Shown here piece by piece: positions 3,281 to 63,313 of a stretch of 64,000 nt of DNA. Position 1 is the first letter of the stretch; every line of letters starts with the position of its first letter. The stretch covers positions 118,978,001-119,042,000 of the forward strand of contig NW_027362765.1 of assembly GCF_046119375.1 (NCBI RefSeq). The letters run 5' to 3'. Under the pieces are notes generated by a model. It saw only the letters and a program-made list of their open reading frames with translations. It did not search any database and had not been told where the DNA came from. A program made the translations under genes and the position numbers. Source of the DNA: Phyllobates terribilis. Its lineage: Eukaryota.

Positions 3281-3394
3281 GGACTCTGTGGTGCCTGCGG
3301 GCCACATCTGCAGGAAGGCCGCCGAGGGAACGGAGGACAGGTGAGAATCATCTTTTTTTTTTTCTATTTTATGTGTGTGAAGAACAGCACAGAG

Positions 3395-15500: not shown

Positions 15501-15509
15501 TTTATTCAT

Positions 15510-17902: not shown

Positions 17903-18690
17903 AAAAAAAAACACAAACACCCAGAATAAAGTCCTTTAATTGAAATAAAGACACAATTCTTTATTGTTCTAAATTAAACCATACTTACCATCACGCCCAT
18001 TCCAGCTGAAGCCAACGATCCCCTGCAATAAAAGAAAAATAATAAAGCAACATCATCCTTACCTTTCGATGGTTCCCAGGACAGCTCCAGCTCTGCTACA
18101 TCGAGATGACAGGCTGGACCGCAGCAGAACGCTGCCATCCAGCCTGTCATCCCGCAGACACTGAGAAGCGCAGGCATGCTTGCGCTCCTCAGTGTCTCTC
18201 TGTGACGTCATCCAGATGAGCCGAGTTCATGTCCAATGAACTCAGCTCACCTCATGCACGTCACTGACAGCGTGGGAAAATTCTCACGCTGAAGTGCTGA
18301 GTGCAGGAGAATTTTCCCACGCTGTCAGTGACGTGCATGAGGTGAGCTGAGTTCATTGGACATGACCTCGGCTCATCTGGATACCGTCACAGCGAGACAC
18401 TGAGGAGCACAAGCATGCCTGCGCTTCTCAGTGTCTGCGGGATGACAGGCTGGATGGCAGCGTTCTCCTGCGGTCCAGCCTGTCATCTCGATGTAGCAGA
18501 GCTGAAGCTGTCGTGGGAACCATGGAAAGGTAAGGATGAGGTTGCTTTATTATTTTACTTTTATTGCAGGAGATCGTTGGCTTCAGCTGGAATGGGCATG
18601 ATGGTAAGTATGGTTTAATTTAGAACAATAAAGAATTGTGTGTTTATTTCAATTAATGGACTTTATTCTGGGTGTTGTGTTTTTTTAAAT
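17903..18690. repeat. Palindrome P1 (~380-bp arms, ~20-bp loop)
   Basis: Mirror ORFs 17974-18177(-) and 18415-18618(+) translate almost identically; centre CAGCGTGGGAAAATTCTC...GAGAATTTTCCCACGCTG. Confidence 0.92.
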
Positions 18691-19339
18691 ACTTTAATAG
18701 AAATTCATGGTGGTCATGTCTAATATTGGCGTGACCCCATGAATTTCGGGCTTAGGGCCAGCTGATAATGCCAAGCTGGCCTTAACCCCTTTATTACCCA
18801 GTGAGCCACCGCACCAGGGCCCTGGATGAGTTGGGTACAGCGCCAGAAGATGGCGCTTCTATGAACGCGCCATTTTCTGGGGCGGCTGCGGACTGCAATT
18901 TGCAGCGGGGGTGGCCCAGAAAGCTTGGGTCTCCCTGCGCTGCGGATTCCAGCCCCCAGCTGCCTAGTTGTACCTGGCTGGACACAAAAATAGGGCGAAG
19001 CCCCCCGCATTTTTTTTTTTAATTATTTCATGAAATTCATGGAATAATTAAGAAAAAAAGGGCTTCCCTATATTGTTGTGTCCAACCAGGTACAAAGAGG
19101 CAGCTGGTGGTTGGGGGCAGCCCATTCCTGCCTGCTGTACCTGGCTGGACACAAATATAGTGCGAAGCCCCACGTCAATTTTTTTTTAATTATTTCATGA
19201 AATAATTTTTTTAAAAAAGGGCTTCCCTATATTGTTGTGTCCGGCCAGGTACAAATAGGCAGCTGGTGGTTGGGGGCAGCCTGTTCCTGCCTGCTGTACC
19301 TGGCTGGACACAAATATAGGGCGAAGCCCCACATCAATT

Positions 19340-22300
19340 TTTTTTAAAATAAATCCTTTATTTTAACACTAAATGACATTTGAGGAGTTAATAAAGATGC
19401 AGTCCCTAAATTATTATTTATTTTTTAATTAATTTTTCCCAAAACTTTTGACGTGGGCTTCGCCATATTTTTGTATGCCAGCCAGGTACAGCATCCAGCT
19501 TCTATGAACGCGTCATTTTCCGGGGTGGCTGCGGACTGCAATTTTCAGCGGGGGGGGGGGGCAGAAAGCTTGGGCCTCCCTGCGCTGCAGATTCCATCCC
19601 CCAGCTGCCTAGTTGTACCTGGCTGGACACAAAAATAGAGAGAAGCTTCACGTATTTTTTTTTTTTAATTATTTCATGAAATTCATGAAATAATTAAGAA
19701 AAAAAGGGCTTCCCTATATTGTTGTGTCCAACCAGGTACAAATAGGCAGCTGGTGGTTGGGGGCAGCCCGTTCCTGCCTGCTGCACCTGACTGGACACAA
19801 ATATAGTGCGAAGCCCCACGTCAATTTTTTTTAAATCATTTCAGGAAATTCATGAATTTAAAAAAAAAATACGTGGAGCTTCGCCCTATTTTTGTGTCCA
19901 GCCAGGTACAGCAGGCAGGAACAGGCTGCCCCCAACCACCAGCTGCCTATTTGTACCTGGCCGGACACAACAATATAGGGAAGCCCTTTTTTAAAAAAAT
20001 TATTTCATGAAATAATTAAAAAAAAATTGACGTGGGGCTTCGCTCTGTTTTTGTGTCCAGCCAGGTACAACTAGGCAGCTGGGGGCTGGAATCTGCAGCG
20101 CAGGGAGGCCCAAGCTTTCTGGGCCCCACCCGCTGCAAATTGCAGTCCGCAGCCGCCCCGGAAAATGGCGCGTTCATAGAAGCGCCATCTTCTGGCGCTG
20201 TACCCAACTCATCCAGGGCCCTGGTGCGGTGGCTCACTGGGTAATAAAGGGGTTAAGGCCAGCTTGGCATTATCAGCTGGCCCTAAGCCCGAAATTCATG
20301 GGGTCACACCAATATTAGACATGACCACCATGAATTTCTAGTAAAGTATTTAAAAAAAACACAAACACCCAGAAAAAAGTCCTTTAATTGAAATAAACAC
20401 ACAATTCTTTATTGTTCTAAATTAAACCATACTTACAGTCACGCCCATTCCAGCTGAAGCCAACGATCTCCTTCAATAAAAGAAAAATAATAAAGCAACC
20501 TCATCCTTACCTTTCCATGGCTCCCGCGACGGCTCCAGCTCTGCTACATCGAGATGACAGGCTGGACCGCAGCAGAACGCTGCCATCCAGCCTGTCATCC
20601 CGCAGACACTGAGAAGCGCAGGCATGCTTGCGCTCCTCAGTGTCTCTCTGTGACGGCATAAAGATGAGCCGAGGTCATGTCCAATGAACTCAGCTCACCT
20701 CATGCACGTCACTGACAGCGTGGGAAAATTCTCCTGCACTCAGCGCTTCAGCGTGAGACTTCTCCCACGCTGTCAGTGACATACATGAGGTGAGGTCATG
20801 TCCAATGAACTCGGCGCACCTCATGCACGTCACTGACAGCGTGGGAAAATTCTCACGCTGAAGCGCTGAGTGCAGGAGAATTTTCCCACGCTGTCAGTGA
20901 CGTGCATGAGGTGAGCCGAGTTCATTGGACATGACCTTCGCTCATCTGGATGCCGTCACAGCCAGACACTGAGGAGCGCAAGCATGCCTGCGCTTCTCAG
21001 TGTCTGCGGGATGACAGGCTGGATGGCAGCGTTCTGCTACGGTCCAGCCTGTCATCTCGATGTAGCAGAGCTGAAGCTGTCGTGGGAACCATGGAAAAGT
21101 AAGGATGAGGTTGGTTTATTATTTTACTTTTATTGCAGGAGATCGTTGGCTTCAGCTGGAATGGGCGTGACTGTAAGTATGGTTTAATTTAGAACAATAA
21201 AGAATTGTGTCTTTATTTCAATTAAAGGACTTTTTTCTGGGTGTTTGTGTTTTTTTTAAATACTTTACTAGAAATTCATGGCGGTCATGTCTAATATTGG
21301 CGTGACCCCATGAATTTCGGGCTTAGGGCCAGCTGATAATGCCAAGCTGGCCTTAACCCCTTTATTACCCAGTGAGCCACCGCACCAGGGCCCTGGATGA
21401 GTTGGGTACAGCGCCAGAAGATGGCGCTTCTATGAACGCGCCATTTTCCGGGGCGGCTGCGGACTGCAATTTGCAGCGGGTGGGGCCCAGAAAGCTTGGG
21501 CCTCCCTGCGCTGCAGATTCCAGCCCCCAGCTGCCTAGTTGTACCTGGCTGGACACAAAAATAGAGAGAAGCTTCACGTATTTTTTTTTTTTAATTATTT
21601 CATGAAATTCATGGAATAATTAAGAAAAAAAGGGCTTCCCTATATTGTTGTGTCCGGCTAGGTACAAATAGGCAGCTGGTGGTTGGGGGCAGCCCGTTCC
21701 TGCCTGCTGTACCTGACTGGACACAAATATAGGGCGAAGCCCCACGTCAATTTTTTTTTAACTATTTCATGAAATAATTTAAAAAAAAAAGGGCTTCCCT
21801 ATATTGTTGTGTCCGGCCAGGTACAAATAGGCAGCTGGTGGTTGGGGGCAGCCCGTTCCTGCCTGCTGTACCTGACTGGACACAAATATAGGGCGAAGCC
21901 CCACATAATTTTTTTTTAATTATTTCATGAATTTCCTGAAATAATTAAAAAAAAATTGACGTGGGGCTTCACACTATATTTGTGTCCAGCCAGGTACAGC
22001 AGGCAGGAACGGGCTGCCCCCAACCACCAGCTGCCTATTTGTACCTGGCCAGACACAACAATATAGGGAAGCCCTTTTTTTCTTAATTATTCCATGAATT
22101 TCATGAAATAATAAAAAAAAAAAAAACGTGGAGCTTCTCCCTATTTTTGTGTCCAGCCAGGTACAACTAGGCAGCTGGGGGATGGAATCTGCAGCGCAGG
22201 GAGGCCCAAGCTTTCTGCCCCCCCCCTCTGAAAATTGCAGTCCGCGGCCGCCCCGGAAAATGGCGCGTTCATAGAAGCTGGATGCTGTACCTGGCTGGCA

Positions 22301-27689: not shown

Positions 27690-30615
27690 TATATTGCCCC
27701 ACCCTCTATTACTATATATTGTGCCCCCTATATTACTGTACAATGTGAACCCCTATATTACTGTATAATGTGCCCCTATATTACTATATATTGTGCCCCC
27801 TATATTACTGTATATTGTGCCCCCTATATTATTGTATAATGTCCCCCGTGTATAATGTGCCTCCAATATTACTATATATTGTACTCCCTATATTACTGTA
27901 CAGAAGTATGCCCCCTATATTACTGTATAATGTGTCCCCATATGACTGTATATTGTGCCCCTTATATTACTGTATACTGTGCCCCACTATATTACTGTAC
28001 AGTGTGCCCCTATATTACTGTATAATGTGTTCCCTATATTACTGTATATCGCGCCTCCTATATTACTGTACAGTCAGTGTACCCCCATATTACTGTATAT
28101 TGTGCCCCCTATATTGCTGTATATTGTGCCCCCTATATTACTGTATACTGTGCCCCACTATATTACTGTACAGTGTGCCCCTATATTACTGTATAATGTG
28201 TCCCCTATATTATTGTATATCGTGCCTCCTATATTACTGTACAGTGTACCCCCATATTACTGTATATTGTGCCCCCTATATTACTGTATAATGTGCCCAT
28301 ATATTACTGTATAATGTGTCCCCTATATTATTGTATATTGTGCCTCCTATATTACTGTACAGTCAGTGTACCCCCATATTACTGTATATTGTGCCCCCTA
28401 TATTACTGTATATTGTGCCCCCTATATTACTGTAGTCAGTGTGCCCCTATATTACTGTACAATCAGTGTGCCCCCTATATTACTGTATATTGTGCCCCCT
28501 ATATTACTGTATATTGTACCCCTATATTACTGTATATTGTGCCCCCTATATTACTAAGTGTCCCCTATGTTACTCTCTATTGTGCTCTATATTACTGTAG
28601 TCAGTGTGCCCCTATATTACTGTACAATCAGTGTGCCCCCTATATTACTGTATATTGTGCCCCATATATTACTGTATATTGTGCCCGCTATATTACTGTA
28701 TAATGTGCCCCTATATCACTGTATATTGTGCCCCCTATATCACTGTGCCCCCTATATTACTGTATAGTTAATGTGCGCCCCTATATTACTGTATAATGTG
28801 TCCCCTATATTACTGTATATTATGCCCCTGTATAATGTGATCCCTATATTACTGTATATTGTGCCCTCTATATTATTGTATAGTCAGTGTGCTCCCAATA
28901 TTACTGTATAATGTGCCCCATATATTACTTTTATTGCGCTCCCTATATCACTGTATAATGTGACCTCTATATTACTGTATAATGTGCCCCCTATATTACT
29001 GTATATTGTGCCCTATCTCACTGTATATTGTGCCCCCTATATTACTGTATACTGTGTCCCCTATATCACTGTACAGTCAGTGTGCTTCCTATATAAATGT
29101 ATTTTGTGCCCCCTATATCACTGTACATTGTCTTCAATATTACTGTACAGTCAGTGTGCCCCTATATTACTGAATATTGTGCCCCTATATTACTGTATAT
29201 TGTGCCCCCTATATTGCTGTATAATGTGCCAATATCACTGTATAATGTGCCCCTATATTACTGTTTATTGTACCCCTATATTACTGTACAGTGTGCCCCC
29301 TACGTTACTGTATATTGTGCCCCTATATCACTGTAGAGCCAGTGTGCCCCTATATTACTGTATATTGTGCCCCCTATATTACTGTAGTCAGTGTGCCCTC
29401 TATATTACTGTACAGTCAGTGTGCCCCCTATATCACTGTACAGTGTGCCCTATATTATTGTATATTGTGCCCCCTATATTACTGTAGTCAGTGTGCCCCC
29501 TATATTACTTTATATTGTGCCCCCTATATTACTGTACAGTCAGTGTGCCCCTATATTACTGTATATTGTGCCCCCTATATTACTGTAGTCAGTGTGCCCC
29601 CTATATTACTGTACAGTCAGTGTGCCCCTATATTACTGTATATTGTGCCCCCTATATTACTGTACAGTCAGTGTGCCCCCTATATGACTGTATATTGTGC
29701 CCCTATATTACTGTATACTGTGCCCCCTATATTACTGTACAGTCAGTGTGCCCCTATATTACTGTATATTGTGCCCCCTATATTACTGTAGTCAGTGTGC
29801 CCCCTATATTACTGTACAGTCAGTGTGCCCCTATATTACTGTATATTGTGCCCCTATATTACTGTACAGTCAGTGTGCCCCCTATATGACTGTATATTGT
29901 GCCCCTATATTACTGTATACTGTGCCCCCTATATTACTGTAGTCAGTGTGCCCCCTATATTACTGTACAGTCAGTGTGCCCCTATATTACTGTATATTGT
30001 GCCCCTATATTACTGTACAGTCAGTGTGCTCCCTATATGACTGTATATTGTGCCCCTATATTACTGTATACTGTGCCCCCTATATTACTGTACAGTCAGT
30101 GTGCCACTATATTACTGTATATTGTGCCCCCTATATTACTGTTTATTGTGCCCATATTACTGTACAGTCAGTGTGCCCCCTATATTACTGTATATTGTGC
30201 TCCCTATATTACTGTACAGTCAGTGTGCCCCTATATTACTGTATACTGTGCCCCCTATATTACTGTACAGTCAGTGTGCCACTATATTACTGTATATTGT
30301 GCCCCCTATATTACTGTTTATTGTGCCCATATTACTGTACAGTCAGTGGGCCCCCTATATTATTTTATTGTGCCCCCTATATTACTGTACAGTCAGTGTG
30401 CCACTATATTACTGTATATTGTGCCCCCTATATTACTGTACAGTCAGTGTGCCCCTATATTACTGTTTATTGTGCCCCTATATCACTGTACAGTCAGTGT
30501 GCCCCCTATATTACTGTATATTGTGCCCCCTATATTACTGCACAGTCAGTGTGCCCCCTATATTACTGTATATTGTGCCCCTATATTACTGTACAGTCAG
30601 TGTGCCCCCTATGTG
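27690..30615. repeat. 2.9-kb CCCCTATATTACTGTA(TATTGTG/CAGTCAGTGTG) minisatellite
   Basis: Direct tandem units; ends abruptly at the GC-rich xkr7 promoter region. Confidence 0.96.
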
Positions 30616-32640: not shown

Positions 32641-35600
32641 TTACTGGTGACTTCTCTGATTGCAACATCTCCATTATTATTGGGTTCATTATATTTTTAC
32701 TGAAACCGCAGAAGATGAGAGTAATAATGATTTCTGGTTGCTATGGATGATGGAATATTCACAATCCTCCATATGCTGCTACAACACACAACCCACTCTG
32801 CTACATCACCATCTGGTGCAATATACAGGTCACTGTACTATCAGTATATACCACATGTAATATGCAGTAACTGTACTATTAGTATATATCACATGTAATA
32901 TATCCAGACACTGTACTATTAGTATATATCTCATGTAATATACAGTCACTGTGTATTATTAGTATATATCACATCACATGTAATATAGTCACTGTGTATT
33001 ATTTGTATATATCACATGTAATATACAGTCACTGTGTACTATTAGTATATATCACATGTAATATACAGTCACTGTGTACTATTAGTATTCAACACATCTA
33101 ATATACAGACACTGTACTATTAGTATATAACATGTAATATACAGTCACTGTGTACTATTAGTATACTGTATAACACATGTAATATTCAGACACTGTACTA
33201 TTAGTTTATATCACATGTAATATACAGTCACTGTGTACTTTTAGTATATATCACATGTAATATATCCAGACACTGTACTATTAGTATATATCACATGTAA
33301 TATACAGTCACTGTGTACTATTAGTATATAACACATGTAATATACAGTCACTGTACTATTAGTTTATATCACATGTAATATACAGTCACTGTGTACTTTT
33401 AGTATATATCACATGTAATATACAGTCACTGTACTATTAGTATATATTACATGTAATATACTGATCACTGTGTACTATTAGTATATATCACATGTAATAT
33501 ACAGTCACTGTGTACTATTAGTATATATTACATGTAATATACAGTCACTGTGTATTATTAGTATATACCACATGTAATATACTGGTCACTGTACTATTAG
33601 TATATATCACATGTAATATACAGTCACTGTGTACTATTAGTATATATCACATGTAATATACTGGTCACTGTACTATTAGTATATATCACATGTAATATAC
33701 AGTCACTGTGTACTATTAGTATATTTGACATGTAATATACAGTCACTGTGTACTCTTAGTATATATTACATGTAATATACAGTCACTGTGTATTATTAGT
33801 ATATATCACATCACATGTAATATAGTCACTGTGTATTATTTGTATATATCACATGTAATATACAGTCACTGTGTACTATTAGTATATATTACATGTAATA
33901 TACAGTCACTGTGTACTATTAGTATTCAACACATCTAATATACAGACACTGTACTATTAGTATATATTACATGTAATATACAGTCACTGTGTACTATTAG
34001 TATGTATCACATGTAATATACAGTCACTGTGTACTATTAGTTTATATCACATGTAATATACAGTCACTGTGTACTTTTAGTATATATCACATGTAATATA
34101 TCCAGACACTGTACTAGTAGTATATATCACATGTAATATACAGTCACTGTGTACTATTAGTATATATCACATGTAATATACAGTCACTGTGTGCTATTAG
34201 TATATATCACATGTAATATACAGTCACTGTGTACTATTAGTATTCAACACATCTAATATACAGACACTGTACTATTAGTATATATTACATGTAATATACA
34301 GTCACTGTGTACTATTAGTATGTATCACATGTAATATACAGTCACTGTGTACTATTAGTATATAACACATGTAATATTCAGTCACTGTACTATTAGTTTA
34401 TATCACATGTAATATACAGTCACTGTGTACTTTTAGTATATATCACATGTAATATATCCAGACACTGTACTATTAGTATATATCACATGTAATATACAGT
34501 CACTGTGTACTATTAGTATATAACACATGTAATATACAGTCACTGTACTATTAGTATATATCACATGTAATATACAGTCACTGTGTACTATTAGTATATA
34601 ACACATGTAATATACAGTCACTGTACTATTAGTTTATATCACCTGTAATATACAGTCACTGTGTACTATTAGTATATATCACATGTAATATATTGGTCAC
34701 TGTGTACTATTAGTTTATACCACATGTAATATACAGTCACTGTGTACTATTAGTAGATATCACCTGTAATATACAGTCACTGTGTACTATTAGTATATAT
34801 CACATGTAATATACAGTCACTGTGTACTATTAGTATATACCACATGTAATATACAGTCACTGTGTACTATTAGTATATATCACATGTAATATACAGTCAC
34901 TCTGTACTATTAGTATATATTACATGTAATATACCGTCACTGTGTACTATTAGTATATACCATATGTAATATACAGGTCACTGTGTACTATTAGTATATA
35001 CCATATTACATATGGTATATATACTGTGTACTATTAGTATATACCACATGTAATATACAGTCACTGTGTACTATTAGTTTATATCACATGTAATATACTG
35101 TTCACTGTGCACTGTTAGTATATATTACATGTAATATACAGTCATTGTGTACTGTTAGTATATATTACATGTAATATACAGTCACTGTACTATTAGTATA
35201 TATCACATGTAATATACAGTCACTGTGTACTATTAGTATATATTACATGTAATATACAATCACTGTATTATTAGTATATATCACATGTAATATATTGGTC
35301 ACTGTGTATTATTAGTATATACCACATGTAATATACAGTCACTGTGTACTATTAGTATATATTACATGTAATATACCGGTACTGTGTACTATTAGTATAT
35401 ATTACATGTAATATATAGTCACTCTGTACTATTAGTATATATTACATGTAATATACAGGTCACTGTGCACTATTAGTATATACCACATGTAATATGGTAT
35501 ATATACTGTGTACTATTAGTATATATCACATGTAATATACAGTCACTGTGTACTATTAGTTTATATCACATGTAATATACTGGTCACTGTGTATTGTTAG

Positions 35601-37074
35601 TATATATTACATGTAATATACAGTCATTGTGTACTGTTAGTATATATTAGATGCAATATACAGTCACTGTGTACTATTAGTATATATCACATGTAATATA
35701 CAGTCACTGTGTACTATTAGTATATATTACATGTAATATATAGTCACTCTGTACTATTAGTATATATTACATGTAATATACAGGTCACTGTGCACTATTA
35801 GTATATACCACATGTAATATGGTATATATACTGTGTACTATTAGTATATATCACATGTAATATACAGTCACTGTGTACTATTAGTTTATATCACATGTAA
35901 TATACTGGTCACTGTGTATTGTTAGTATATATTACATGTAATATACAGTCATTGTGTACTGTTAGTATATATTAGATGCAATATACAGTCACTGTGTACT
36001 ATTAGTATATATTACATGTAATATACAGTCACTGTGTACTATTAGTATATATTACATGTAATATACAGTCACTGTGTACTATTAGTATATATTACATGTA
36101 ATATACAATCATTGTGTATTATTAGTATATATCACATGTAATATATTGGTCACTGTGTATTATTAGTATATATCACATGTAATATACAGTCACTGTGTAC
36201 TATTAGTAGATAAAACCTGTAATATACAGTCACTGTGTACTATTAGTATATACCACATGTAATATACAGTCATTGTGTATTATTAGTATATATCACATGT
36301 AATATGCAGTCACTGTGTACTATTAGTAGATAAAACCTGTAATATACAGTCACTGTGTACTATTAGTATATACCACATGTAATATACAGTCACTGTGTAT
36401 TATTAGTATATATCACATGTAATATACTGTCACTGTGTACTATTAGTAGATAAAACCTGTAATATACAGTCACTGTGTACTATTAGTATATGCCACATGT
36501 AATATACAGTCACTGTATTATTAGTATATATCACATGTAATATACAGTCACTGTGTACTATTAGTATATGCCACATGTAATATACAGTCACTGTATTATT
36601 AGTATATATCACATGTAATATACAGTCACTGTGTACTATTAGTAGATAAAACCTGTAATAGACAGTCACTGTGTACTATTAGTATATACCACATGTAATA
36701 TAGTCACTGTGAATTATTAGTATATATCACATGTAATATACTGTCACTGTATACTATTAGTAGATAAAACCTGTAATAGACAGTCACTGTGTACTATTAG
36801 TATATACCACATGTAATATACAGACACTGTACTATTAGTATATACAGTGGGTACGGAAAGTATTCAGACCCCGTTAAATGTTTCACTCTTTGTTTCATTG
36901 CAGCCATTTGGTAAATTCTAAAAAGTTCATTTTTTCTCATTAAAGTACACTCTGTACCCCATCTTGACTGAAGAAAAAGAAATGTAGACATTTTTGCAAA
37001 TTTATTAAAAAAGAAAAACTGAAATATCACATGGTCATAAGTATTCAGACCCTTTGCTTATACACTCATATTTA

Positions 37075-37728: not shown

Positions 37729-37870
37729 GTGATCCTCCTTGAGATGGTTCTACTCCTTCATTGGAGTCCAGCTGTGTTTAATTAAACTGATAGGACTTGA
37801 TTTGGAAAAGCACACACCTGTCTATATAAGACCTCACAGCTCATAGTGCATGTCAGACCAAATGAGAATC

Positions 37871-39052
37871 ATGAGCTCAAAGGAACTGCCCAAGGAGCTC
37901 AGAGACAGAATTGTGGCAAGGCACAGATCTGGCCAATGTTATAAAAGAATTTCTGCATTACTCAAGGTTCCTAAGAGAACAGTGGCCTCCATAATCCTTA
38001 AATGGAAAAAGTTTGGGACCACTAGAAGTCTTCCTAGACGTGGCCGTCCAACCAAACTGAGCAATTGTGGGAGAAGAGTCTTGGTGAGAGAAGTAAAGAA
38101 GAACCCTAAGATCACTGTGGCTGAGCTCCAGAGATGCAGTAGGGAGATGGGAGAAAGTTCCACAAAGTCAACTATCGCTGCAGCCCTCCACCAGTCTGGC
38201 CTTTATGGCAGAGTGGCCCGACGGAAGCCTCTCCTCAGTGCAAGACATATGAAAGCCCGCATAGAGTTTGCTCAAAAACACATGAAGGACTCCCAGACTA
38301 TGAGAAATAAGATTCTCTCGTAGATTGTGAGCCCTCGCGGGCAGGGTCCTCGCACCTCCTGTACCAGTCGCTGTCACATTGTGTTCAAGATTATTGTAAT
38401 TGTTCTTGTATTATACCCCTTTTTTCACATGTAAAGCGCCATGGAATAAATGGCGCTATAATAATAAATAATAATAATAATTCTCTGGTCTGATGAGACG
38501 AAGATAGAACTTTTTGGTGATAATTCTAAGCGGTATGTGTGGAGAAAACCAGGCACTGCTCATCACCTGCTCAATACAATCCCAACAGTGAAACATGGTG
38601 GTGGCAGCATCATGCTATGGGGGTGTTTTTCAGCTGTAGGGACATGACGACTGGTTGCAATTGAAGGAAACATGAATGCGGCCAAGTATAGAGATATCCT
38701 GGATGAAAACCTCTTCCAGAGTGCTCTGCACCTCAGACTTGGCCGAAGGTTCACCTTCCAACAAGACAATGACCCTAAGCACACAGCTAAAATAAAGGAG
38801 TGGCTTCATAACTCTGTGACCATTCTTGACTGGCCCAGCCAGAGCCCTGACCTAAACCCAATTGAGCATCTCTGGAGAGACCTGAAAATGGCTGTCCATC
38901 AACGTTCACCATCCAACCTGACTGAACTGGAGAGGATCTGCAAGGAAGAATGGCAGAGGATCCTTAAATCCAGCTGTGAAAAACTTGTTGCATCATTCCC
39001 AAGAAGACTCATGGCTGTACTAGCTCAAAAGGGTGCTTCTACTCAATACTGA
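37871..39052 (+). pseudogene. Tc1 transposase (MSSKELPKELRDRIV...), interrupted
   Basis: ORFs 37850-38323 and 38672-39052 ([20 protein letters not shown]); insertion between NKIL and WSDE. Confidence 0.9.
38319..38479 (+). mobile_element. 5'-truncated L2-type 3' end with (TAA)n tail
   Basis: GTAAAGCGCCATGGAATAAATGGCGCTATAATAATAAATAATAAT; TSD ATTCTCT at 38312-38318 and 38480-38486. Confidence 0.8.
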
Positions 39053-41745: not shown

Positions 41746-42698
41746 GTCTTTCTGCCACTGCTTCTCTCCTTTCTCTTGCTTGGATGATTGCCTCTTACCA
41801 AAAGGTCCTAAGAGATTCCCGGGACGATAAGATGCCCATGTCCTACAAAGGGGCTGTAGTGCAAATACTATGGCATCTCTTCACCATTGCTGCCCGAGCC
41901 TTGGCCTTCTCCCTCTTTGCCTCTGTCTTCCACTTATACTTTGGTATCTTCATTGTCACTCACTGGTGTCTCATGACTTTTTGGATTATCCAAGGGGAGA
42001 CAGACTTCTGCATGTCTCGCTGGGAGGAGATCATCTACAACATGGTGCTGGGGATCATCTACATCTTCTGCTGGTTCAATGTTCGTGAGGGTCGGACTCG
42101 CTGTAGAATGAGCACCTACTACATCATTGTACTGTCTGAGAACGCAGTCCTCACCGCTCTGTGGTATTATTATCGGCCAGATTATATGCTCAGTGACTTC
42201 TACGCTCTACTTATTGTTTGTTCGGTGCTCTGCAGCTTTGCTCTTGGTGTCTTCTTCATGCTTATATACTACAGTCTTCTGCATCCCAATGGTCCAATGT
42301 TTGGCCCCTCAAGTAGTAGTTGTGTGTTCACAGAAGGTCCTGAGACTTCTAGGGTCCCTGAATTGGAAGGCGCAGAAAGCCTTCCTTGTACTCTACCACG
42401 GACTACAGAGCAAGAACGGGACATGGTGCCTGGTGACAGGGACAGTTGTGTTCCTGTGTTCCAAGTCCGTTCTAGTGTCCCACCAACCCCTGTGACACGT
42501 GTTCCCCGAGCGCAAGGGCCTGTCATACGTATCGATCTTCCACGAAAGAAATATCCTGCCTGGGATGCCCATTTTATTGACCGCCGCTTGCGGAAGACTA
42601 TTTTGGCCTTGGAATATACTTCCCCAGCAACACCCCGTGTCCAGTACCGAACTTTAGGGACCTCACAGGAAGTTATGGAGTATGAAACAACAGTGTGA
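41746..42698 (+). CDS. xkr7: XK-related protein 7, coding exon 3
   Basis: [14 protein letters not shown]...GETDFCMS...[22 protein letters not shown]...YETTV*; the spliced CDS is 1491 nt (496 aa). Confidence 0.97.
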
Positions 42699-54052: not shown

Positions 54053-54777
54053 TATATTACTAAAGGATCTGGAGCATATATTGGACCAACCTCCAGAACT
54101 GTTGCCCCCTGTAGGGAAAAACGGATTTTGGCCCTGATCCCTTATGCGAGATCTTCATCACTGCAGATCATCCGTCGTTGGCTATGTGAATAGCTACATC
54201 AGTCCTCCCAATGCTTTTAAAGAAAATAAGACAAACCAGACAACTAAGAATAATTTCTACATAGCAGCACAATGCAGAAATGACAATGTGCAGTTCTGAT
54301 GCTGTTTATTATGGAGGTGCCAAGAAGGAATGTGCTGAGGCGTTCAACCATATGGCTGCACATGGGGGGTCCAGGCCCCAGAGAGGAGCATATGGCTGAT
54401 ACCACATTGTATTCTGTGCTGTGAAGCTGCACTAAATATCCATAGGAAAACATATTTATGGAAGATTTAAAGGGGTTGAACAAGATTTAAAAAAACATGG
54501 TTACTTTCTTCCGGAAACAGTGCTCATTGGTCCACAAGTTGCGCCTGGTATTACAGCTTAGCTCCAAAGGGTAACGTTTCTCCTTACGGAGAGTGACATG
54601 CCAGGCTAAGGAGGCTTGTAGGTCGTGCAATGACCCACTGGGAAATAAAATACATACATTTTCTCTTCAGAGAGGAAGAGGACTTGAACTCTAGTGCCAC
54701 CTATTGGATGTCGCAATCCTAGAAGTCAATATAGATAGAGCCTTTAATGAGCCTTGCCATATGACTTAGGATAAAAG

Positions 54778-54856
54778 CCAAACCAGAATCTCAATTTACA
54801 GACACGTGTTTTGGGGTTTTGCCCCTCCTCAGTGCAAAGCATGAGATGTGATTTGG
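54778..54856 (-). ncRNA. Type I hammerhead motif, probably inactivated (GAAA changed to AAAA)
   Basis: Minus strand TTTGCA-CTGAGGA-GGGG CAAAA CCCC-AAAA-CACGTG-TC-TGTAAA; perfect palindromic stem III ACACGTGT. Confidence 0.75.
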
Positions 54857-55006
54857 TTGTATGAGAGGCCTCTTCAAAAACACAATTTCCATATTTAATT
54901 TCCCAGAGGAGCATTGCATGGCTTATAAGTTACCTTACACTGATATAGCACTCTCCATAAGGAGAAACATTAGCCCTTAGACCCCAGTCAGAGGTCGCTT
55001 ATACAG

Positions 55007-55085
55007 CCAAATCCGATCTCATGTTTTGCACTGAGGAGGGGGAAAACACCGAAATACGTGTCTGTAAATTGAGATTCTGGTTCGG
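55007..55085 (+). ncRNA. Type I hammerhead ribozyme motif
   Basis: TTTGCA-CTGAGGA(55031)-stem II with one mismatch-GAAA(55051)-TACGTG-TC(55062)-TGTAAA; extended stem I TCTCA/TGAGA. Confidence 0.78.
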
Positions 55086-55330
55086 CTTTTATCCTAAGTC
55101 ATGTGGCATGGCCTGTTAAAGGGTTCATATTGATTTCTAGGATTGCTACATCCAATAGGTGACACTATTATTCAAGTCCTCTTCCTCTCTGAAGAGGCAA
55201 TTAGCATATTTAATTTCCCAGATGGGCATTGCATAACCTATAAGTCTCCTTATACTGGCAAGTCAGGCATGTCACTTTCCACAAGTAGAAACATTAGCCC
55301 TTAGACCCCAGTCAGAGGCCTCTCATACAG

Positions 55331-55410
55331 CCAAATCAGATCTCTATGCTTTGCACTGAGGAGGGGCAAAACCTCGAAATATGTGTCTGTAAATTGAGAT
55401 TCTGGTTTGG
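55331..55410 (+). ncRNA. Type I hammerhead ribozyme motif (most intact core and stem II)
   Basis: TTTGCA-CTGAGGA(55356)-GGGG CAAAA CCTC-GAAA(55376)-TATGTG-TC(55387)-TGTAAA; CCAAATCAGATCTC pairs with GAGATTCTGGTTTGG. Confidence 0.82.
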
Positions 55411-56087
55411 CTTTTATCCTAAGTCGTGACAAGGCTTGTGAAAGGGTTGCTATTGATTTCTAGGATTGCTACTTCCAATAGGTGGCACTATAGAGTTCAA
55501 GTTCTCTTCTAGGAAGAGTCAATTTGCACGCTTAGTTCCAGTGAAGTTAATGAGCTGTCACATATTACCTTGTGACTGGCGTGGCACTGTTTTTGGAAAG
55601 CAGATGTGATTTTTATTCTTGTACATCCCCATTTAACTTGCAAGTGCACAAGTACTGATCGATATTCACTTTCTATGAAGATGCGGCAGAGCCGAGCTTG
55701 TCGTTGATGCCATCATTTGGTGTCCAATGTATGATAAGACTACAAGTGAAGCTTCTACATTATCACAAGGAGTTACAAGCCCCTTTTCCTCTGCTGCATC
55801 ACATACTGTTGTGTGCTTCCACCTAGAAGCAGTCCAAGGAATTGCATTACACTTTTCATGTCTATATCTGCCCTTATCACATTGGACAGAAGTAGGAACT
55901 AGACTCTCTCCCTCAATCTGGTGGAGTTTCCTCTGTAGGAAAATAACAATGGAAAGGAAGAGGAGGCAGAGCCAGTTCTACAGAGACCAGGGAGCTGGGA
56001 GGGCAGGAATACGCATGAAGTCTGGTAGGACGCAGACATACCCTGGAAGTTTGTGGTAACTGGTGAAGTCATCTGAAAGACAGCAAA

Positions 56088-56553: not shown

Positions 56554-56988
<435 letters not shown>

Positions 56989-58597
56989 TAACTACTATAA
57001 TACTGCCCCTATGTACAAGAATATAGCTACTATAATACTGCCCCCTATGTACAGGAATATAACTACTATAATACTGCCCCTATGTACAAGAATATAACTA
57101 CTATAATACTGCCCCTATGTACAAGAATATAATTACTATAATATTGCCTCCTATGTACAAGAATTACCTACTATAATACTACTCCTATGTACTAGATTTA
57201 ACTACTATAATACTACCACCTATGTACAAGAATATGACTACGATAATACTGCACCTTCTGTACAAGAATATAACTACTATAATACTGCCTCTATGTACAA
57301 GAATATAATTACTATAATATTGCCTCCTATGTACAAGAATATACCTACTATAATACTACCCCTATGTACTAGATTTAACTACTATAATACTACCCCCTAT
57401 GTACAAGAATATAACTACTATAATACTGCTCCCTATGTACAAGAATAGAACTATAATGCTGCCCCTATGTACAAGAATGTACAAGAATAGACCTACTATA
57501 ATACTGCATCCTATGTACAAGAATATACCTACTCTAATACTATTCCTATATACAAGAATATACCTATTATAATACTGCTCCTATGTACAAGAATATTACT
57601 ACTATAATACTGTCCCCTATGTACAAGAATAGAACTACTATAATACTGCCCCCTATGTACAAGAATAGAACTACTATAATAGTGCCCCTATGTACAAGAA
57701 TATAACTACTATAGTACTGCTCCCTAGGTACAAGAATATACCTACTATAATACTTCTCCTATGTACAAGAATAGAACTACTATAATACTGCCCCTATGTA
57801 CAAGAATATAACTACTATAATACTGCTCCCTATGTACAAGAATAGAACTACTATAATGCTGCCCCTATGTACAAGAATAGATCTACTATAATACTGCCCC
57901 CTATGTACAAGAATAGAACTATAATAGTGCCCCTATGTACAAGAATATAACTACTATAGTACTGCTCCCTATGTACAAGAACAGAACTACTATAGTACTG
58001 CTCCTTATGTACAAGAATAGAACTACTATAATACTGCTCCCTATGTACAAGAATAGAACTACTATAATACTGCCCCTATGTACAAGAATGTACAAGGATA
58101 GAACTACTATAATACTGCATCCTATGTACAAGAATATATCTACTATAATACTGCTCCTATGTACAAGAATATAACTACTATAATACTGCTCCCTATGTAC
58201 AAGAATAGAACTACTATCATCGTGCCCCTATGTACAAGAATATAGCTACTATAATACTGCTCCTATGTACAAGAATATAACTACTATAATACTGCCCCCT
58301 ATATACAAGAATATAACTACTATAATACTGCTCCTATGTACAAGAATATAACTGCTATAATACTGCTCCTATGTACAAGAATATAACTACTATAATACTG
58401 TCCCTATGTACAAGAATATAACTACTATAATACTGCATCCTATGTACAAGAATATAACTACTATAATACTGCTCCTTTGTACAAGAATATAACTACTATA
58501 ATACTGCTCCTATGTACAAGAATAGAACTACTATAATACTGCCCCCTATGTACAAGAATATAACTGCTATAATACTGCTCCTATGTACAAGAATATA

Positions 58598-60248
58598 CAG
58601 TTATATGAAAAAGTTTGGGCACCCCTATTAATCTTAAGCTTAATGTTTTATAAAAATTGGTGTTTTTGCAACAGCTATTTCAGTTTGATATATGTAATAA
58701 CTGTTGGACACAGTAATGTTTCTGCCTTGAAATGAGGTTTATTGTACTAACAGAAAATGTGCAATCTGCATTCAAACAAAATTTGACAGGTGCATAAGTA
58801 TGGGCACCTCACCAGAAAAGTGACATTAATATTTAGTAGATCCTCCTTTTACAAAAATAAAAGCCTCTAGTCGCTTCCTGTAGCTTTTAATGAGTTCCTG
58901 GATCCTGGATGAAGGAATTTTTGACCATTCCTCTTTACAAAACAATTCCAGTTCAGTTAAGTTTGATGGTCGCCGAGCATGGACAGCCCTCTTCAAATGA
59001 TCCCACAGATGTTCAATGATATTCAGGTCTGGGGACTGGGATGGCCATTCCAGAACATTGTAATTGTTCCTCTGCATGAATGCCTGAGTAGATTTGGAGC
59101 GGTGTTTTGGATCATTGTCTTGCTGAAAGATCCATCCCCTGCGTAACTTCAACTTTATCACTGATTCTTGAACATTATTGTCAAGAATCTGCTGATACTG
59201 AGTGGAATCCATGTGTCCCTCAACTTTAACAAGATTCCTGGTGCCAGCATTGGCCACACAGCCCCAAAGCATGATGGAACCTCCACCAAATTTTACTGTG
59301 GGTAGCAAGTGCTTTTCTTGGAATGCTGTGTTTTTTTTGCCGCCATGCATAACGCCTTTTTGTATGACCAAACAACTCAATCTTGGTTTCATCAGTCCAC
59401 AGGACCTTCTTCCAAAAAGAAATTGGCTTCTCCAAATGTGCTTTTGCATACCTCAGCCGACTCTGTTTGTGGCGTGCTTGCAGAAACGACTTCTTTCGCA
59501 TCACTCTCCCATACAGCTTCTCCTTGTGCAAAGTGCGTTGTATAGTTGACCAATGCACAGTGACACCATCTGCAGCAAGTTGATGCTGCAGCTCTCTGGA
59601 GGTGGTCTGAGGATTGTCCTTGACTGATCTCACCATTCTTCTTCTCTGCCTTTCTGATGTTTTTCTTGGCCTGCCACTTCTGGCCTTAACAAGAACTGTT
59701 CCTGTGTTCTTCCATTTCCTTACTATGTTCCTCACAGTGGAAACTGACAGGTTAAATCTCCAAGACAGCTTTTTGTATCCTTCCCCTGAACAACTATGTT
59801 GAATAATCTTTGTTTTCAGATCATTTGACAGTTGTTTTGAGGAGCCCATGATGCCACTCTTCAGAGGAGATTCAAACAGGAGAACAACTTGCAAGTGGCC
59901 ACTTTAAGTAGCTTTTCTCATGATTGCATACACCTGGCTATGAAGTTCAAAGCTCAATGAGGTCACAAAACCAAAAAAAGTGCTTTAGTAAGTCAGTAAA
60001 AAGTAGGTAGGAGTATTTAAAACAAGAAAATGATAAGAGTGCCCATACTTATGCACCTGTCAAATTTTGTTTGAATGCAGATTGCACATTTTCTGTTAGT
60101 ACAATAAACCTCATTTCAAGGCAGAAACATTACTGTGTCCAACAGTTATTACATATATCAAACTGAAATAGCTGTTGCAAAAACGCCAATTTTAAGAAAA
60201 CATTAAGCTTAAGATTAATAGGGGTGCCCAAACTTTTTCATATAACTG
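58598..60248 (-). mobile_element. Young full-length Tc1 transposon (1651 bp)
   Basis: TA|CAGTTATATGAAAAAGTTTGGGCACCCC; near-identical TIRs of ~210 bp; TA duplicated within a minisatellite unit. Confidence 0.96.
58826..59849 (-). pseudogene. DD34E Tc1 transposase, 340 aa after removing one base
   Basis: MGSSKQLSNDL...WTDE...QQDND(34 aa)E...KY*; span 1024 nt = 1023+1; the extra base is in the T8 run at 59331-59338. Confidence 0.92.
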
Positions 60249-62115: not shown

Positions 62116-62547
62116 TGACACCCCTGCATGCACTATGCCTCAATTATGGCATGGTAGAAAGCCTTGGTTATTGACTTTGTACTTGTGTAGGAACCAAGAT
62201 TGCCAACTTGATTTTTTTTCTGGCCAATATTTTTCTGCCATTGGAGACCCCGGGCAAAATAATTAGGGAATAGTTCCAAAACATCAACCTAATAGCAGTA
62301 CAACAATGTGCCCAAACAGTACCACGTCCAAATAAAAGCATCCTAAATATATTGCCAAAATAATAGCATACCAAGCTCCAACTATTATGCCATGTTGTGC
62401 CCAAATATCTCCGTGACTTGTTCTAATACAAGTGTCCAAAAAAGAATACCTAAATAATACCACCATGATGCCTGTAGTGTCCAGACAGCAATGCCAAAAT
62501 AATAACTGCACACAATGGCCAAATAACAGTCATATTATACTGAAATA

Positions 62548-62901
62548 TAAGGGGAAACATTTCTAATTGTGGAGAGTGACAGTGTAAGGAGACTTATAGG
62601 CCATCCAATGGTCCTCTGCGAAATTAAATATGCAATAATGCCACATACTGGAAGTAGCAATCCTAAAAGTCAATGTCAACTCTTTAATGAGCATTGCCAC
62701 ATGACTTAGGATCTCATGCTTTGCACTGAGGAGGGGTGACAGATCGAAACACAGGTCTGCAAATTGAGATTCTGGTTTGGCTTTTATTCTAAGTCATGTG
62801 ACAAGGCTCGTTAAAGGGTCGATATTGACAATTTTTAGATTGCTATTTTCAGTAATTGGCACCAGAGTTCAAGTCCTCTTCCTCTCTAAAGAGGCAATTT
62901 G
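62548..62901 (+). mobile_element. Second, internally deleted insertion of the hammerhead-bearing element (ccm2l intron 6)
   Basis: Inverted part ~62548-62710 plus forward part 62711-62901; TSD CATATTATACTGAAATA (62531-62547) / CATATTATACTGAAGTA (62902-62918). Confidence 0.78.
62712..62769 (+). ncRNA. Type I hammerhead motif with degenerate stem II, sense to ccm2l
   Basis: TCTCATGC-TTTGCA-CTGAGGA(62726)-GGGGTGACAGATC-GAAA(62746)-CACAGG-TC(62757)-TGCAAA-TTGAGA. Confidence 0.7.
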
Positions 62902-63313
62902 CATATTATACTGAAGTACTACTGCCATATTGTGTCAAAATAATACTAGCTTAGGCTGGTTTCACACATCCGATGTGTCTCCTGACATGACATTGGAAGA
63001 GCAGGAGAACTGCAGCCGGTTTAGACATCGTAGTCGTTACTCGGGTCGTGAATGTTGGATGTGTGATATCGGCCCCACTGTTCCCAATAAAGTGTCATGT
63101 TGAGATTTGCAGCCATGCTGGGGTCCTGATGATGAGCACAGACTCTGCCATATGCCGTGTGCAGTAGAGTCCTGTCCCATTGACCTTAGCATTCCTACAT
63201 TCTCAAACCAGTTATGGTGGCTATAGGGTGTTTTTGATGGAAGAACCAGGACTCTCCTTCCATTTATAGCCTGGCTCTGGACATTGCTTGATTCTTTTCT
63301 CGTCTTTCTGCAG

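What the first reader, a model, noticed from the sequence alone, without database searches (positions are those of the whole stretch)
54567..55529. Tandem ~325-bp non-coding repeat with a type I hammerhead ribozyme in every unit: a candidate retrozyme / circular-RNA replicon
Seen in sequence: each unit contains the hammerhead core. Consensus of four copies: CCAAATCAGATCTCATGC-TTTGCA-CTGAGGA-GGGG CAAAA CCCC-GAAA-CACGTG-TC^-TGYAAA-TTGAGATTCTGGTTTGG. This gives a 6-bp stem I plus a bulge and a long extension, a 4-bp stem II, a palindromic stem III (ACACGTGT) and a GUC cleavage triplet. Two sense copies would cut after 55062 and 55387 and release a 325-nt monomer with no ORF. Established knowledge: newt satellite 2, Penelope-like element pseudo-LTRs and metazoan non-LTR retrozymes carry such type I hammerheads with a palindromic stem III that works as a dimer, and retrozymes yield small circular RNAs. 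Inference: this is a retrozyme-like family. I cannot tell from the sequence whether this particular family has been described.
Basis: partly seen in the sequence, partly recalled or inferred. Interest (0 to 1): 0.92.

Follow-up and report, generated by a model that had tools for sequence, protein, structure and literature searches.

The report
Old frog hammerhead retrozyme insertion
This is a real but old and decayed insertion of a very abundant frog "retrozyme", a small non-coding retroelement whose 325-base unit carries a self-cleaving hammerhead RNA motif; the class is already described in amphibians, so the locus is ordinary, though its layout fits mobilisation by Penelope-like elements.

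Summary
The hammerhead motifs are real. A generic type I descriptor finds two complete motifs in 64 kb and none in 200 shuffles. Rfam Hammerhead_1 aligns full-length to three of the four copies, but below its gathering score. The two sense cleavage sites, after 55062 and 55387, are 325 nt apart, and the unit has no ORF.

The stretch is not a plain tandem array. 54567-55529 is one insertion flanked by an 11-bp target-site duplication. It holds a 307-nt inverted arm head-to-head with a 661-nt direct arm of 2.03 units. A second insertion at about 62545-62904 has the same layout and the same two outer ends. That is the published architecture of Penelope-like element insertions.

The family is huge, with 14,000-21,000 DNA contigs per run, and occurs in four species. 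Its majority letters restore a perfect hammerhead.

This locus has decayed by about 6-8% per unit. The inverted hammerhead has lost G12, and helices II and III of the sense copies are weakened. The two arms would pair into a 275-bp hairpin.

No RNA-only circular junction was seen. Amphibian non-LTR retrozymes derived from Penelope-like elements are already published. The scan has noted this family many times elsewhere in this genome. Verdict: a new member of a known kind, of low interest.

The parts
54556..54566 (.). Left copy of the target-site duplication, GCTTAGCTCCA
   Evidence: Read directly from the sequence. It matches 55530-55540 at 10 of 11 positions.
54567..54873 (-). Inverted arm, 307 nt. 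On the minus strand it runs from unit position 252 through 325 and 1 to about 240, so its 5' end lies at the junction and its 3' end at the left edge of the insertion.
   Evidence: Inverted repeats I1-I7; blastn against a trimer of the reference unit.
54795..54838 (-). Hammerhead of the inverted arm. It is nearest to the family majority but has G12 changed to A (plus-strand T at 54812, where the family majority reads C); the change is at a CpG.
   Evidence: Rfam RF00163 full-length match, 17.9 bits, E 0.024. Family letter at 54812.
54869..55529 (+). Direct arm, 661 nt or 2.03 head-to-tail units: unit positions about 122-325, then 1-325, then 1 to about 144. The junction with the inverted arm lies at about 54869-54883.
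   Evidence: Direct repeats D1-D4 with spacing 315-325; unit mapping.
55007..55085 (+). First sense hammerhead with its extended helix I. The core is 55025-55068 and the predicted cut is after C55062. The catalytic core is complete; helix II has 3 of 4 pairs.
   Evidence: Rfam RF00163, 21.0 bits, E 0.002, model positions 1-45 of 45. The minimum-free-energy fold is no better than shuffles, z +0.17.
55063..55387 (+). The 325-nt monomer that two cleavages would release. It is non-coding.
   Evidence: Coordinates. No ORF above 56 aa. Folded as a circle it is no more stable than shuffles, z -0.13.
55331..55410 (+). Second sense hammerhead with its extended helix I. The core is 55350-55393 and the predicted cut is after C55387. 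The core is complete and helix II has 4 pairs including one G-U. Helix III has decayed to AUAUGUGU.
   Evidence: Fold z -4.0, driven by the long helix I. No Rfam match. Helix III self-duplex is only -2.2 kcal/mol.
55530..55540 (.). Right copy of the target-site duplication, GCTTAGTTCCA
62545..62904 (.). Second, shorter insertion of the same family with the same layout. The inverted arm covers unit positions 29-107 and 142-241, and the direct arm covers 277-325 then 1-148. It is flanked by a perfect 11-14-bp duplication (62531/62534-62544 and 62902/62905-62915).
62720..62763 (+). Hammerhead of the second insertion. The core letters are present, but helix II is destroyed and helix III is no longer palindromic.
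   Evidence: Rfam RF00163, 17.7 bits, E 0.024, with four non-pairs in helix III.

Best explanation
54567-55529 is a single, old insertion of a non-autonomous retroelement that carries a hammerhead ribozyme. It belongs to an anuran 'non-LTR retrozyme' family and was most likely mobilised by the reverse transcriptase-endonuclease of a Penelope-like element (PLE).

Shown here:
- The insertion is bounded by an 11-bp target-site duplication.
- It consists of an inverted, 5'-truncated arm placed head-to-head with a direct arm of 2.03 head-to-tail 325-nt units.
- A second insertion 7 kb away shares both outer ends (unit position about 241 for the inverted arm and about 147 for the direct arm) but has different inner break points.
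- The unit is non-coding.
- Each unit carries a canonical metazoan type I hammerhead: a 6-bp helix I with an internal loop and a long extension, a 4-bp helix II with a 5-nt loop, and a 2-bp helix III with the palindromic tetraloop ACGU.
- The family has on the order of ten thousand copies, is present in four species, and its majority sequence keeps a perfect hammerhead.

Inferred:
- In source copies, a transcript that spans two units folds the two ribozymes into a double hammerhead through an 8-bp intermolecular helix III. [quoted passage not shown] A host RNA ligase can then close that RNA into a circle.
- A PLE protein nicks both target strands and starts reverse transcription at two preferred internal sites of a multimeric or circular template. 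That yields the two arms and the duplication.

This particular copy is a fossil. Its units have diverged by about 6-8% each. One ribozyme has lost G12 at a CpG. The other two have weakened helices II and III. In a read-through transcript the arms would pair into a hairpin of about 275 bp that buries the ribozymes.
For: Motif: the core and helices can be read directly and are parsed. A generic descriptor gives 2 hits against 0 in 200 shuffles. The exact family pattern gives 3 hits against 0 expected. Rfam RF00163 aligns over model positions 1-45 of 45 at exactly the predicted coordinates in 3 of 4 copies, with E 0.002-0.024 on tight slices.

Dimer: the near-consensus copy cofolds into a double hammerhead at -26.5 kcal/mol, against -20.4 for two monomers. 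The consensus helix III duplex is -10.3 kcal/mol.

Architecture: searches give the arms and unit coordinates, and one search gives both duplications. The match to published PLE insertions is as follows. Craig et al. 2021 describe partial tandems, an adjacent inverted 5'-truncated copy, and an extension present at one end only (PMC8557442). Frangieh et al. 2024 show a PLE protein that cleaves and extends both strands and starts reverse transcription at two internal sites (PMC11167929).

Abundance and spread: 14,092-21,307 contigs were laid per DNA run in organisms A, B and C. Summed depth reached 3-6 x 10^5, against 5-30 on the flanks.

Family majority restores the motif: 54812 T>C restores G12; 54798, 55065 and 55390 give UGCAAA; 55370 and 54818 give loop CAACA; 55380 gives GAAAC.

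Conservation: pairwise identity is 0.96 at unit positions 1-23 and 0.84 at 269-325, against 0.71-0.72 elsewhere.

Single-template origin: there are 46 private changes against 13 pair-shared ones, and about 12 pair-shared changes are expected from parallel change alone (the expectation is my estimate).

Class precedent: PMC7229834, PMC7761336 and bioRxiv 10.64898/2026.07.22.740005.
Against: No hammerhead match reaches Rfam's gathering score, and copy 55350 is not matched at all.

The hammerhead fold is 4-6 kcal/mol above the minimum-free-energy fold in every monomer. The 325-nt monomer of this locus does not fold better than shuffles as a circle, unlike the highly self-paired circles described for retrozymes.

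No RNA-specific circular junction or cleavage end was seen. The available runs are assembled contigs, and the 'goes back about 320' joints also exist in DNA. The family-to-flank depth ratio is far lower in RNA (about 10^2) than in DNA (about 10^4).

No PLE reverse transcriptase or GIY-YIG ORF lies in the window, and no homology to a PLE pseudo-LTR could be tested. The distance between the two outer ends is about 95 nt, against the 30-40 bp published for the PLE 'tail'.

Only one of nine Xenopus retrozyme dimers cleaved in vitro in the 2026 preprint.
Confidence: 0.75

Rival explanations
1. The stretch is not an independent retrozyme family. It is the heavily 5'-truncated terminal part (pseudo-LTR region) of an autonomous Penelope-like element, whose terminal repeat happens to be 325 nt and carries the hammerhead.
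For: The insertion architecture is that of PLEs (PMC8557442). Most PLE insertions are 5'-truncated and keep only a terminal repeat. Earlier unchecked notes of this scan report many PLEs with hammerheads in this genome.
Against: The direct arm runs through more than two complete 325-nt units without entering any coding sequence. A truncated autonomous element would run from its terminal repeat into the 3' end of the ORF. The hammerhead is of the canonical type, with helix III and loop, whereas vertebrate PLEs are reported to carry minimal variants (PMC4209133). No reverse transcriptase or GIY-YIG ORF is in the window.
Confidence: 0.12
2. The repeat is a relic minisatellite made by local duplication and inversion. 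The hammerhead is an inherited, non-functional remnant, and the family never makes circular RNA.
For: There is no RNA-only junction, no excess of family RNA over DNA, and no stable monomer fold. Eight of nine Xenopus dimers did not cleave in vitro.
Against: Two independent insertions have clean 11-bp duplications and identical outer ends but different inner break points. The family is dispersed at about 10^4 copies in four species. The family majority keeps every core nucleotide and all three helices, and the ribozyme region is the best conserved part of the unit.
Confidence: 0.08
3. It is a DNA transposon or MITE with terminal inverted repeats, and the hammerhead-like motif arose by chance.
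For: There are long inverted repeats with 146-nt arms at 84% complementarity, and the insertion is flanked by a short duplication.
Against: The two termini are not inverted copies of each other: they sit at unit positions about 241 and about 147. The inner junctions differ between the two insertions, as 5' truncation would produce. The motif is far beyond chance and matches RF00163 end to end.
Confidence: 0.02

Closest known systems
Metazoan non-LTR retrozymes (Cervera and de la Pena 2020, PMC7229834), including the axolotl families Rtz_331 and Rtz_353 and the vertebrate survey of Li, Clavereau and Pollet 2026 (bioRxiv 10.64898/2026.07.22.740005)
   Same: Both have a non-coding head-to-tail unit of 170-400 nt (here 325; the amphibian mean is 316), with one type I hammerhead per unit. 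Helix I has 6 bp, helix II has 4 bp, and helix III has 2 bp capped by a palindromic tetraloop, as in HHR_Amex2. Both are predicted to need a dimer, have very high copy number, and have a proposed dependence on Penelope-like elements.
   Different: Neither circular RNA nor cleavage has been shown for this family. This locus is a dispersed, duplication-bounded insertion with an inverted arm, not a long array. The monomer of this copy shows no rod-like fold. Sequence homology to published families could not be tested with the tools at hand.
Penelope-like element insertions (Craig et al. 2021, PMC8557442; Frangieh et al. 2024, PMC11167929; Cervera and de la Pena 2014, PMC4209133)
   Same: Both show a partial tandem, an adjacent inverted 5'-truncated copy and defined outer ends, with an extra stretch at one end only. 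Both carry a hammerhead in the repeated part and show variable 5' truncation.
   Different: There is no reverse transcriptase or GIY-YIG ORF, so the element is non-autonomous. The hammerhead is canonical rather than minimal. The extra stretch is about 95 nt rather than 30-40 bp.
Newt and salamander satellite 2 (Epstein and Gall 1987, as cited in PMC7229834)
   Same: Both have a unit of about 330 bp in an amphibian, a type I hammerhead with a weak palindromic helix III that is active as a dimer, and transcription into unit-length RNAs.
   Different: Satellite 2 is from urodeles and this family is from an anuran. Homology of the non-ribozyme part was not tested. The copies here are dispersed rather than satellite-like.
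Rfam RF00163 Hammerhead_1
   Same: The alignment is full-length (model positions 1-45 of 45), with the core and the palindromic helix III in register in 3 of 4 copies.
   Different: Scores are 17.7-21.0 bits, below the gathering score of 34, and the decayed copy at 55350 is not matched.

Membership tests
Hammerhead ribozyme, type I (RF00163) | Conserved core: C3 U4 G5 A6 N7 G8 A9, G12 A13 A14, the A15.1-U16.1 pair, and H17 at the cleavage site | tested here: met
   The core is complete in 55025-55068 and 55350-55393. It is not complete in the inverted copy (G12 changed to A). The core letters are present in 62720-62763. Family-majority letters restore G12.
Hammerhead ribozyme, type I (RF00163) | Three helices around the core, with helix I open-ended | tested here: met
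   Helix I has 6 of 6 pairs in all copies. Helix II has 4 of 4 pairs in the 54838 and 55350 copies and 3 of 4 in the 55025 copy; it is lost in the 62720 copy. Helix III has 2 bp plus a tetraloop, or 8 bp as a dimer.
Hammerhead ribozyme, type I (RF00163) | Score at or above Rfam's gathering threshold of 34 bits | tested here: not met
   There are no matches at gathering score. Tight slices give 17.9, 21.0 and 17.7 bits, and the 55350 copy gives none.
Hammerhead ribozyme, type I (RF00163) | Self-cleavage after H17 | not testable with these tools
   This needs in vitro transcription of monomer and dimer templates.
Metazoan non-LTR retrozyme | Head-to-tail repeats of about 170-400 nt, each with a type I hammerhead | tested here: met
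   There are 2.03 direct units of 325 nt with hammerheads 325 nt apart.
Metazoan non-LTR retrozyme | No protein-coding capacity and no LTR, primer-binding site or polypurine tract | tested here: met
   The longest ORF is 56 aa. The repeats are the units themselves and no flanking LTRs are present. A primer-binding site and a polypurine tract were not searched for specifically.
Metazoan non-LTR retrozyme | Expression as unit-length linear and circular RNA | tested here: inconclusive
   Family words are present in four RNA-run assemblies, but the flanks are transcribed too. The joints that would mark another unit or a circle also occur in DNA. Contigs carry no end information.
Metazoan non-LTR retrozyme | Highly self-paired monomer | tested here: not met
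   The circular fold of 55063-55387 has z -0.13 against shuffles. This is a decayed copy, so the result says little about the family.
Penelope-like element insertion (non-autonomous derivative) | Partial tandem plus an adjacent inverted 5'-truncated copy, bounded by a target-site duplication | tested here: met
   Seen in two independent insertions.
Penelope-like element insertion (non-autonomous derivative) | Defined reverse-transcription start sites and an extension ('tail') at one end only | tested here: inconclusive
   Both insertions end at unit positions about 147 (direct arm) and about 241 (inverted arm). Many family contigs end near position 147-152. The extra stretch is about 95 nt, against the 30-40 bp in the literature.
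Penelope-like element insertion (non-autonomous derivative) | Sequence homology of the unit to the pseudo-LTR of an autonomous PLE in the same genome | not testable with these tools
Only unchecked scan notes say that PLEs are present.
Autonomous Penelope-like element | ORF with reverse transcriptase and GIY-YIG endonuclease | tested here: not met
   There is no such ORF in or near the element. The only reverse transcriptase in the window is a LINE with an AP-type endonuclease at 4746-7645.

The most novel reading that the evidence does not exclude
The two duplication-bounded, head-to-head insertions with identical outer ends may be direct genomic footprints of dual-strand, internally initiated reverse transcription by a Penelope-like element acting on retrozyme RNA. 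The star-like divergence of the four unit copies in insertion 1 would then mean that more than two units were copied from one monomer sequence, that is, by rolling-circle reverse transcription of a 325-nt circular RNA. This would supply the mechanistic link that the 2020 review says is missing: no conserved motif there pointed to the mobilising element.
Probability: 0.3. Interest if true: 0.5.

Novelty: new member of a known kind. Interest (0 to 1): 0.25.

Why it matters
The locus adds little on its own, because hammerhead retrozymes in amphibians and their descent from Penelope-like elements are already published.

Its modest value is structural. Two clean insertions in one window show target-site duplications, an inverted-plus-direct layout and two fixed outer ends. 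This is architectural evidence, independent of sequence homology, that these elements are inserted by PLE-type machinery.

A genome-wide tally of ends and duplications in this very abundant family could map the start sites of reverse transcription. It could also test the circular-template model.

The locus also illustrates how such insertions create long double-stranded RNA hairpins inside transcribed regions.

Tried and rejected
Rfam:
- At gathering score on the whole window, and at E up to 10 on 1.3-kb and 91-nt slices, there was no hammerhead hit. Only 58-66-nt slices let RF00163 through the filters.
- The MIR7533 hit is an artefact of the inverted repeat.

Other searches that gave nothing:
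- Tandem Repeats Finder does not report the 325-bp repeat.
- Two metagenome scans for the hammerhead and for the conserved unit positions 4-30 found no external copies. A covariation test on many copies was therefore not possible.
- The held supplement of the 2026 preprint is an oligo order form without family sequences.
- The bacterial promoter and terminator scan is irrelevant for a frog.

Readings rejected:
- A chance motif.
- A MITE or DNA transposon, because the termini are not inverted copies of each other.
- A coding element.

Circularity could not be read from the 'goes back' joints, because the same joints are present in DNA.

I did not build a full-length family consensus.
Full report
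**What is in the sequence**

The stretch 54567-55529 holds three copies of one 44-nt motif:
- 54795-54838 on the minus strand
- 55025-55068 on the plus strand
- 55350-55393 on the plus strand

A fourth copy lies at 62720-62763. The exact family pattern gives 3 matches where shuffles give none.

I also wrote a family-independent type I descriptor. It requires a helix I with at least 5 of 6 pairs, CUGANGA, a helix II with at least 3 of 4 pairs, GAAA, the A15.1...U16.1 pair, and H17. It finds exactly the two plus-strand copies in 64 kb on both strands, and nothing in 200 dinucleotide shuffles.

**Rfam**

At gathering score the window has no match. Slices of 1.3 kb and 91 nt at E up to 10 also show no hammerhead. 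On slices of 58-66 nt the filters let RF00163 Hammerhead_1 through:

| Copy | Strand | Bits | E-value |
|---|---|---|---|
| 55025-55068 | + | 21.0 | 0.002 |
| 54795-54838 | - | 17.9 | 0.024 |
| 62720-62763 | + | 17.7 | 0.024 |

Each match covers model positions 1-45 of 45 and sits exactly at the predicted coordinates. The model's loop-less palindromic helix III aligns to ACACGUGU. All three scores are below the gathering score of 34. The 55350 copy is not matched.

So the motif is a recognisable type I hammerhead, but a sub-threshold one.

**Anatomy of the ribozyme**

Parsed:
- Helix I is UUUGCA paired with UGUAAA. The family majority reads UGCAAA.
- It continues through a 3-nt/1-nt internal loop into an extension of about 14 bp.
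- The core is CUGAGGA.
- Helix II is GGGG paired with CCCC, with a 5-nt loop.
- GAAA follows.
- Helix III is 2 bp capped by the palindromic tetraloop ACGU.
- The cleavage triplet is GUC.

This is the 'canonical metazoan type I' layout described in PMC4209133 and resembles HHR_Amex2 of the axolotl (PMC7229834). A weak palindromic helix III of this kind makes the ribozyme work as a dimer.

The folding results agree with that:
- In every monomer the hammerhead fold is 4-6 kcal/mol above the minimum-free-energy fold.
- Two near-consensus copies cofold into a double hammerhead with an 8-bp intermolecular helix III, at -26.5 kcal/mol against -20.4 for two monomers.

**State of the copies at this locus**

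- The inverted copy has G12 changed to A at a CpG.
- Copy 55025 has a mismatch in helix II.
- Copy 55350 has helix III decayed to AUAUGUGU.
- Helix III duplex energies fall from -10.3 kcal/mol (consensus) to -6.5, -4.7 and -2.2.
- The copy at 62720 has lost helix II and the palindrome.

**The layout is not a plain tandem array**

Repeat analysis and mapping onto a trimer of the reference unit give the following. Unit position 1 is the first base after the cut.
- 54567-54873 is an inverted arm. On the minus strand it runs from position 252 through 325 and 1 to about 240.
- 54869-55529 is a direct arm covering about 122-325, then 1-325, then 1 to about 144. That is 2.03 units.
- The two arms meet head-to-head.
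- The whole is flanked by GCTTAGCTCCA (54556-54566) and GCTTAGTTCCA (55530-55540), an 11-bp duplication matching at 10 of 11 positions.

The second insertion (about 62545-62904) has a perfect 11-14-bp duplication. Its inverted arm ends at position 241 and its direct arm at position 148. Its inner break points differ: 29 and 277, against 252 and 122 in the first insertion.

Shared outer ends with variable inner ends mean two strands of cDNA that each start at a preferred site and are truncated at random at their 5' ends.

In the laid public contigs, hundreds of family copies break off at the letters that correspond to position 147-152. They continue into unrelated A/T-rich sequence. A smaller set breaks off at the position-241 end.

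**Comparison with Penelope-like elements**

- Craig et al. 2021 describe PLE insertions as partial tandems, often with an adjacent inverted 5'-truncated copy and an extension present at one end only (PMC8557442).
- Frangieh et al. 2024 show that a purified PLE protein cleaves and extends both target strands. They also show that reverse transcription starts at two internal sites of the RNA (PMC11167929).

The locus fits this in kind. The stretch between its two ends is about 95 nt rather than 30-40 bp, so I treat that identification as inference.

There is no reverse transcriptase or GIY-YIG ORF in the window. The only reverse transcriptase is a LINE with an AP-type endonuclease at 4746-7645. 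The unit has no ORF above 56 aa. The direct arm runs through more than two units without meeting coding sequence. The element is therefore non-autonomous.

**Family size, spread and conservation**

- In DNA assemblies of organism A and of two other organisms, 14,092-21,307 contigs match at 85% or better. An RNA assembly of a fourth organism gives 1,355.
- Summed depth reaches 3-6 x 10^5, against 5-30 on the single-copy flanks. The flanks are largely absent from the other organisms. The tool warns that depth is not copy number, so 'about 10^4 copies' is a rough reading.
- Where this locus departs from the family majority inside the ribozyme, the majority letter restores the motif. Examples are G12 at 54812, UGCAAA at 54798, 55065 and 55390, GAAAC at 55380, and loop CAACA at 54818 and 55370.
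- Among the copies in the window, pairwise identity is 0.96 at positions 1-23 and 0.84 at 269-325, against 0.71-0.72 in the rest. With four to six sequences this is a hint of constraint on source copies, not proof.

**One template for insertion 1?**

Using the second insertion as outgroup, the four unit copies of insertion 1 show 46 private changes and 13 changes shared by a pair. My estimate of the pair-shared changes expected from parallel and back mutation at these divergences is about 12.

The data are therefore compatible with all units having been identical at insertion. That could be a homogeneous multimeric transcript or rolling-circle copying of a circle. The units have decayed by about 6-8% each since then. 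The one mismatch in the duplication agrees with an old event.

**RNA evidence**

Four RNA-run assemblies of organism A hold family words and also cover both flanks at depth 30-157. The locus therefore lies in transcribed DNA, about 12 kb downstream of the last coding exon of an XK-related gene on the plus strand.

The 'goes back about 320' joints are also present in DNA assemblies, so they are further tandem units rather than circles. Contigs give no information on molecule ends.

The family-to-flank ratio is about 10^2 in RNA and about 10^4 in DNA. There is therefore no sign of strong accumulation in these libraries, whose type is not on record.

**Consequence of the layout**

A plus-strand read-through transcript of the insertion folds at -524 kcal/mol, against -262 for shuffles (z -31). 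It has 275 pairs between the arms, and these cover the sense ribozymes.

RNA contigs at flank-level depth show clustered A>G differences at 54644, 54645, 54647, 54648 and 54656. Their share varies between samples, and they are not the family-majority letters. This looks like A-to-I editing of that hairpin, but it needs DNA of the same animals.

**What is known**

- Type I hammerheads in repeats of about 330 bp have been known in urodeles since 1987. They were shown in 2020 to give linear and circular RNAs (PMC7229834).
- About 9,000 minimal hammerheads were counted in Xenopus tropicalis in 2014 (PMC4209133).
- A 2026 preprint reports non-LTR retrozymes in all seven amphibian genomes sampled, with a mean consensus of 316 bp. 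It reports 57 Xenopus families, most of them sister to PLE pseudo-LTRs, and finds cleavage in only one of nine dimers tested.

Earlier notes of this scan, all unchecked, list the same family of about 325-331 nt many times elsewhere in this genome.

**Verdict**

The family-level interpretation holds. This locus is a decayed, hairpin-forming fossil of a known class. The useful extra is the clean Penelope-type insertion footprint.

Noticed in passing
window 54644-54656: RNA-run contigs at flank-level depth read G instead of A at 54644, 54645, 54647, 54648 and 54656. The share varies between samples (for example 11.5 of 20.7 in X8, and 32 of 32 in X1). These are not the family-majority letters. 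The sites lie in the inverted arm, which pairs with the direct arm, so this may be A-to-I editing of a plus-strand read-through transcript.
   Followed up: partly
window 55200-55210 and 62896-62904: The family-majority 3' end of the direct arm reads CAATTTGCATATTTAA and contains the octamer ATTTGCAT. It is intact in the second insertion and mutated in the copies of the first. From my own knowledge, newt satellite 2 is reported to use an snRNA-type promoter with an octamer. Other unchecked notes of the scan propose such a promoter in this family.
   Followed up: no
window 55067-55167: In two RNA runs a 333-nt contig of high depth (about 1,118 in X12 and 576-694 in X1) joins 228 unrelated letters to the unit four bases after the predicted cleavage site (tables 7 and 8). 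Its origin is unknown. It may be an expressed truncated copy elsewhere in the genome.
   Followed up: no
window 41784-42698 (+): An ORF matches the C-terminal half of Pfam XK-related (E 5e-63). It is probably the last coding exon of an XKR gene. The retrozyme insertion lies about 12 kb downstream on the same strand, in DNA that is covered by RNA contigs.
   Followed up: partly
window 4746-7645 (-): LINE-type ORFs: a reverse transcriptase (RVT_1, E 1e-34) preceded by a weak match to an AP-type endonuclease.
   Followed up: partly
window 37850-38323 (+) and 58826-59894 (-): Tc1/mariner (Sleeping Beauty-like) transposase remnants with HTH and DDE_3 domains.
   Followed up: partly
window 3394-4473, 8784-10822, 27690-30593, 32820-36844, 56867-58597: Several long minisatellite arrays with periods of 24-40 bp and up to about 118 copies. 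Variants of the motif CCCCCTATATTACTGTATA recur at 11.4-13.2, 15.5-16.3, 24.8 and 27.7-30.6 kb.
   Followed up: no
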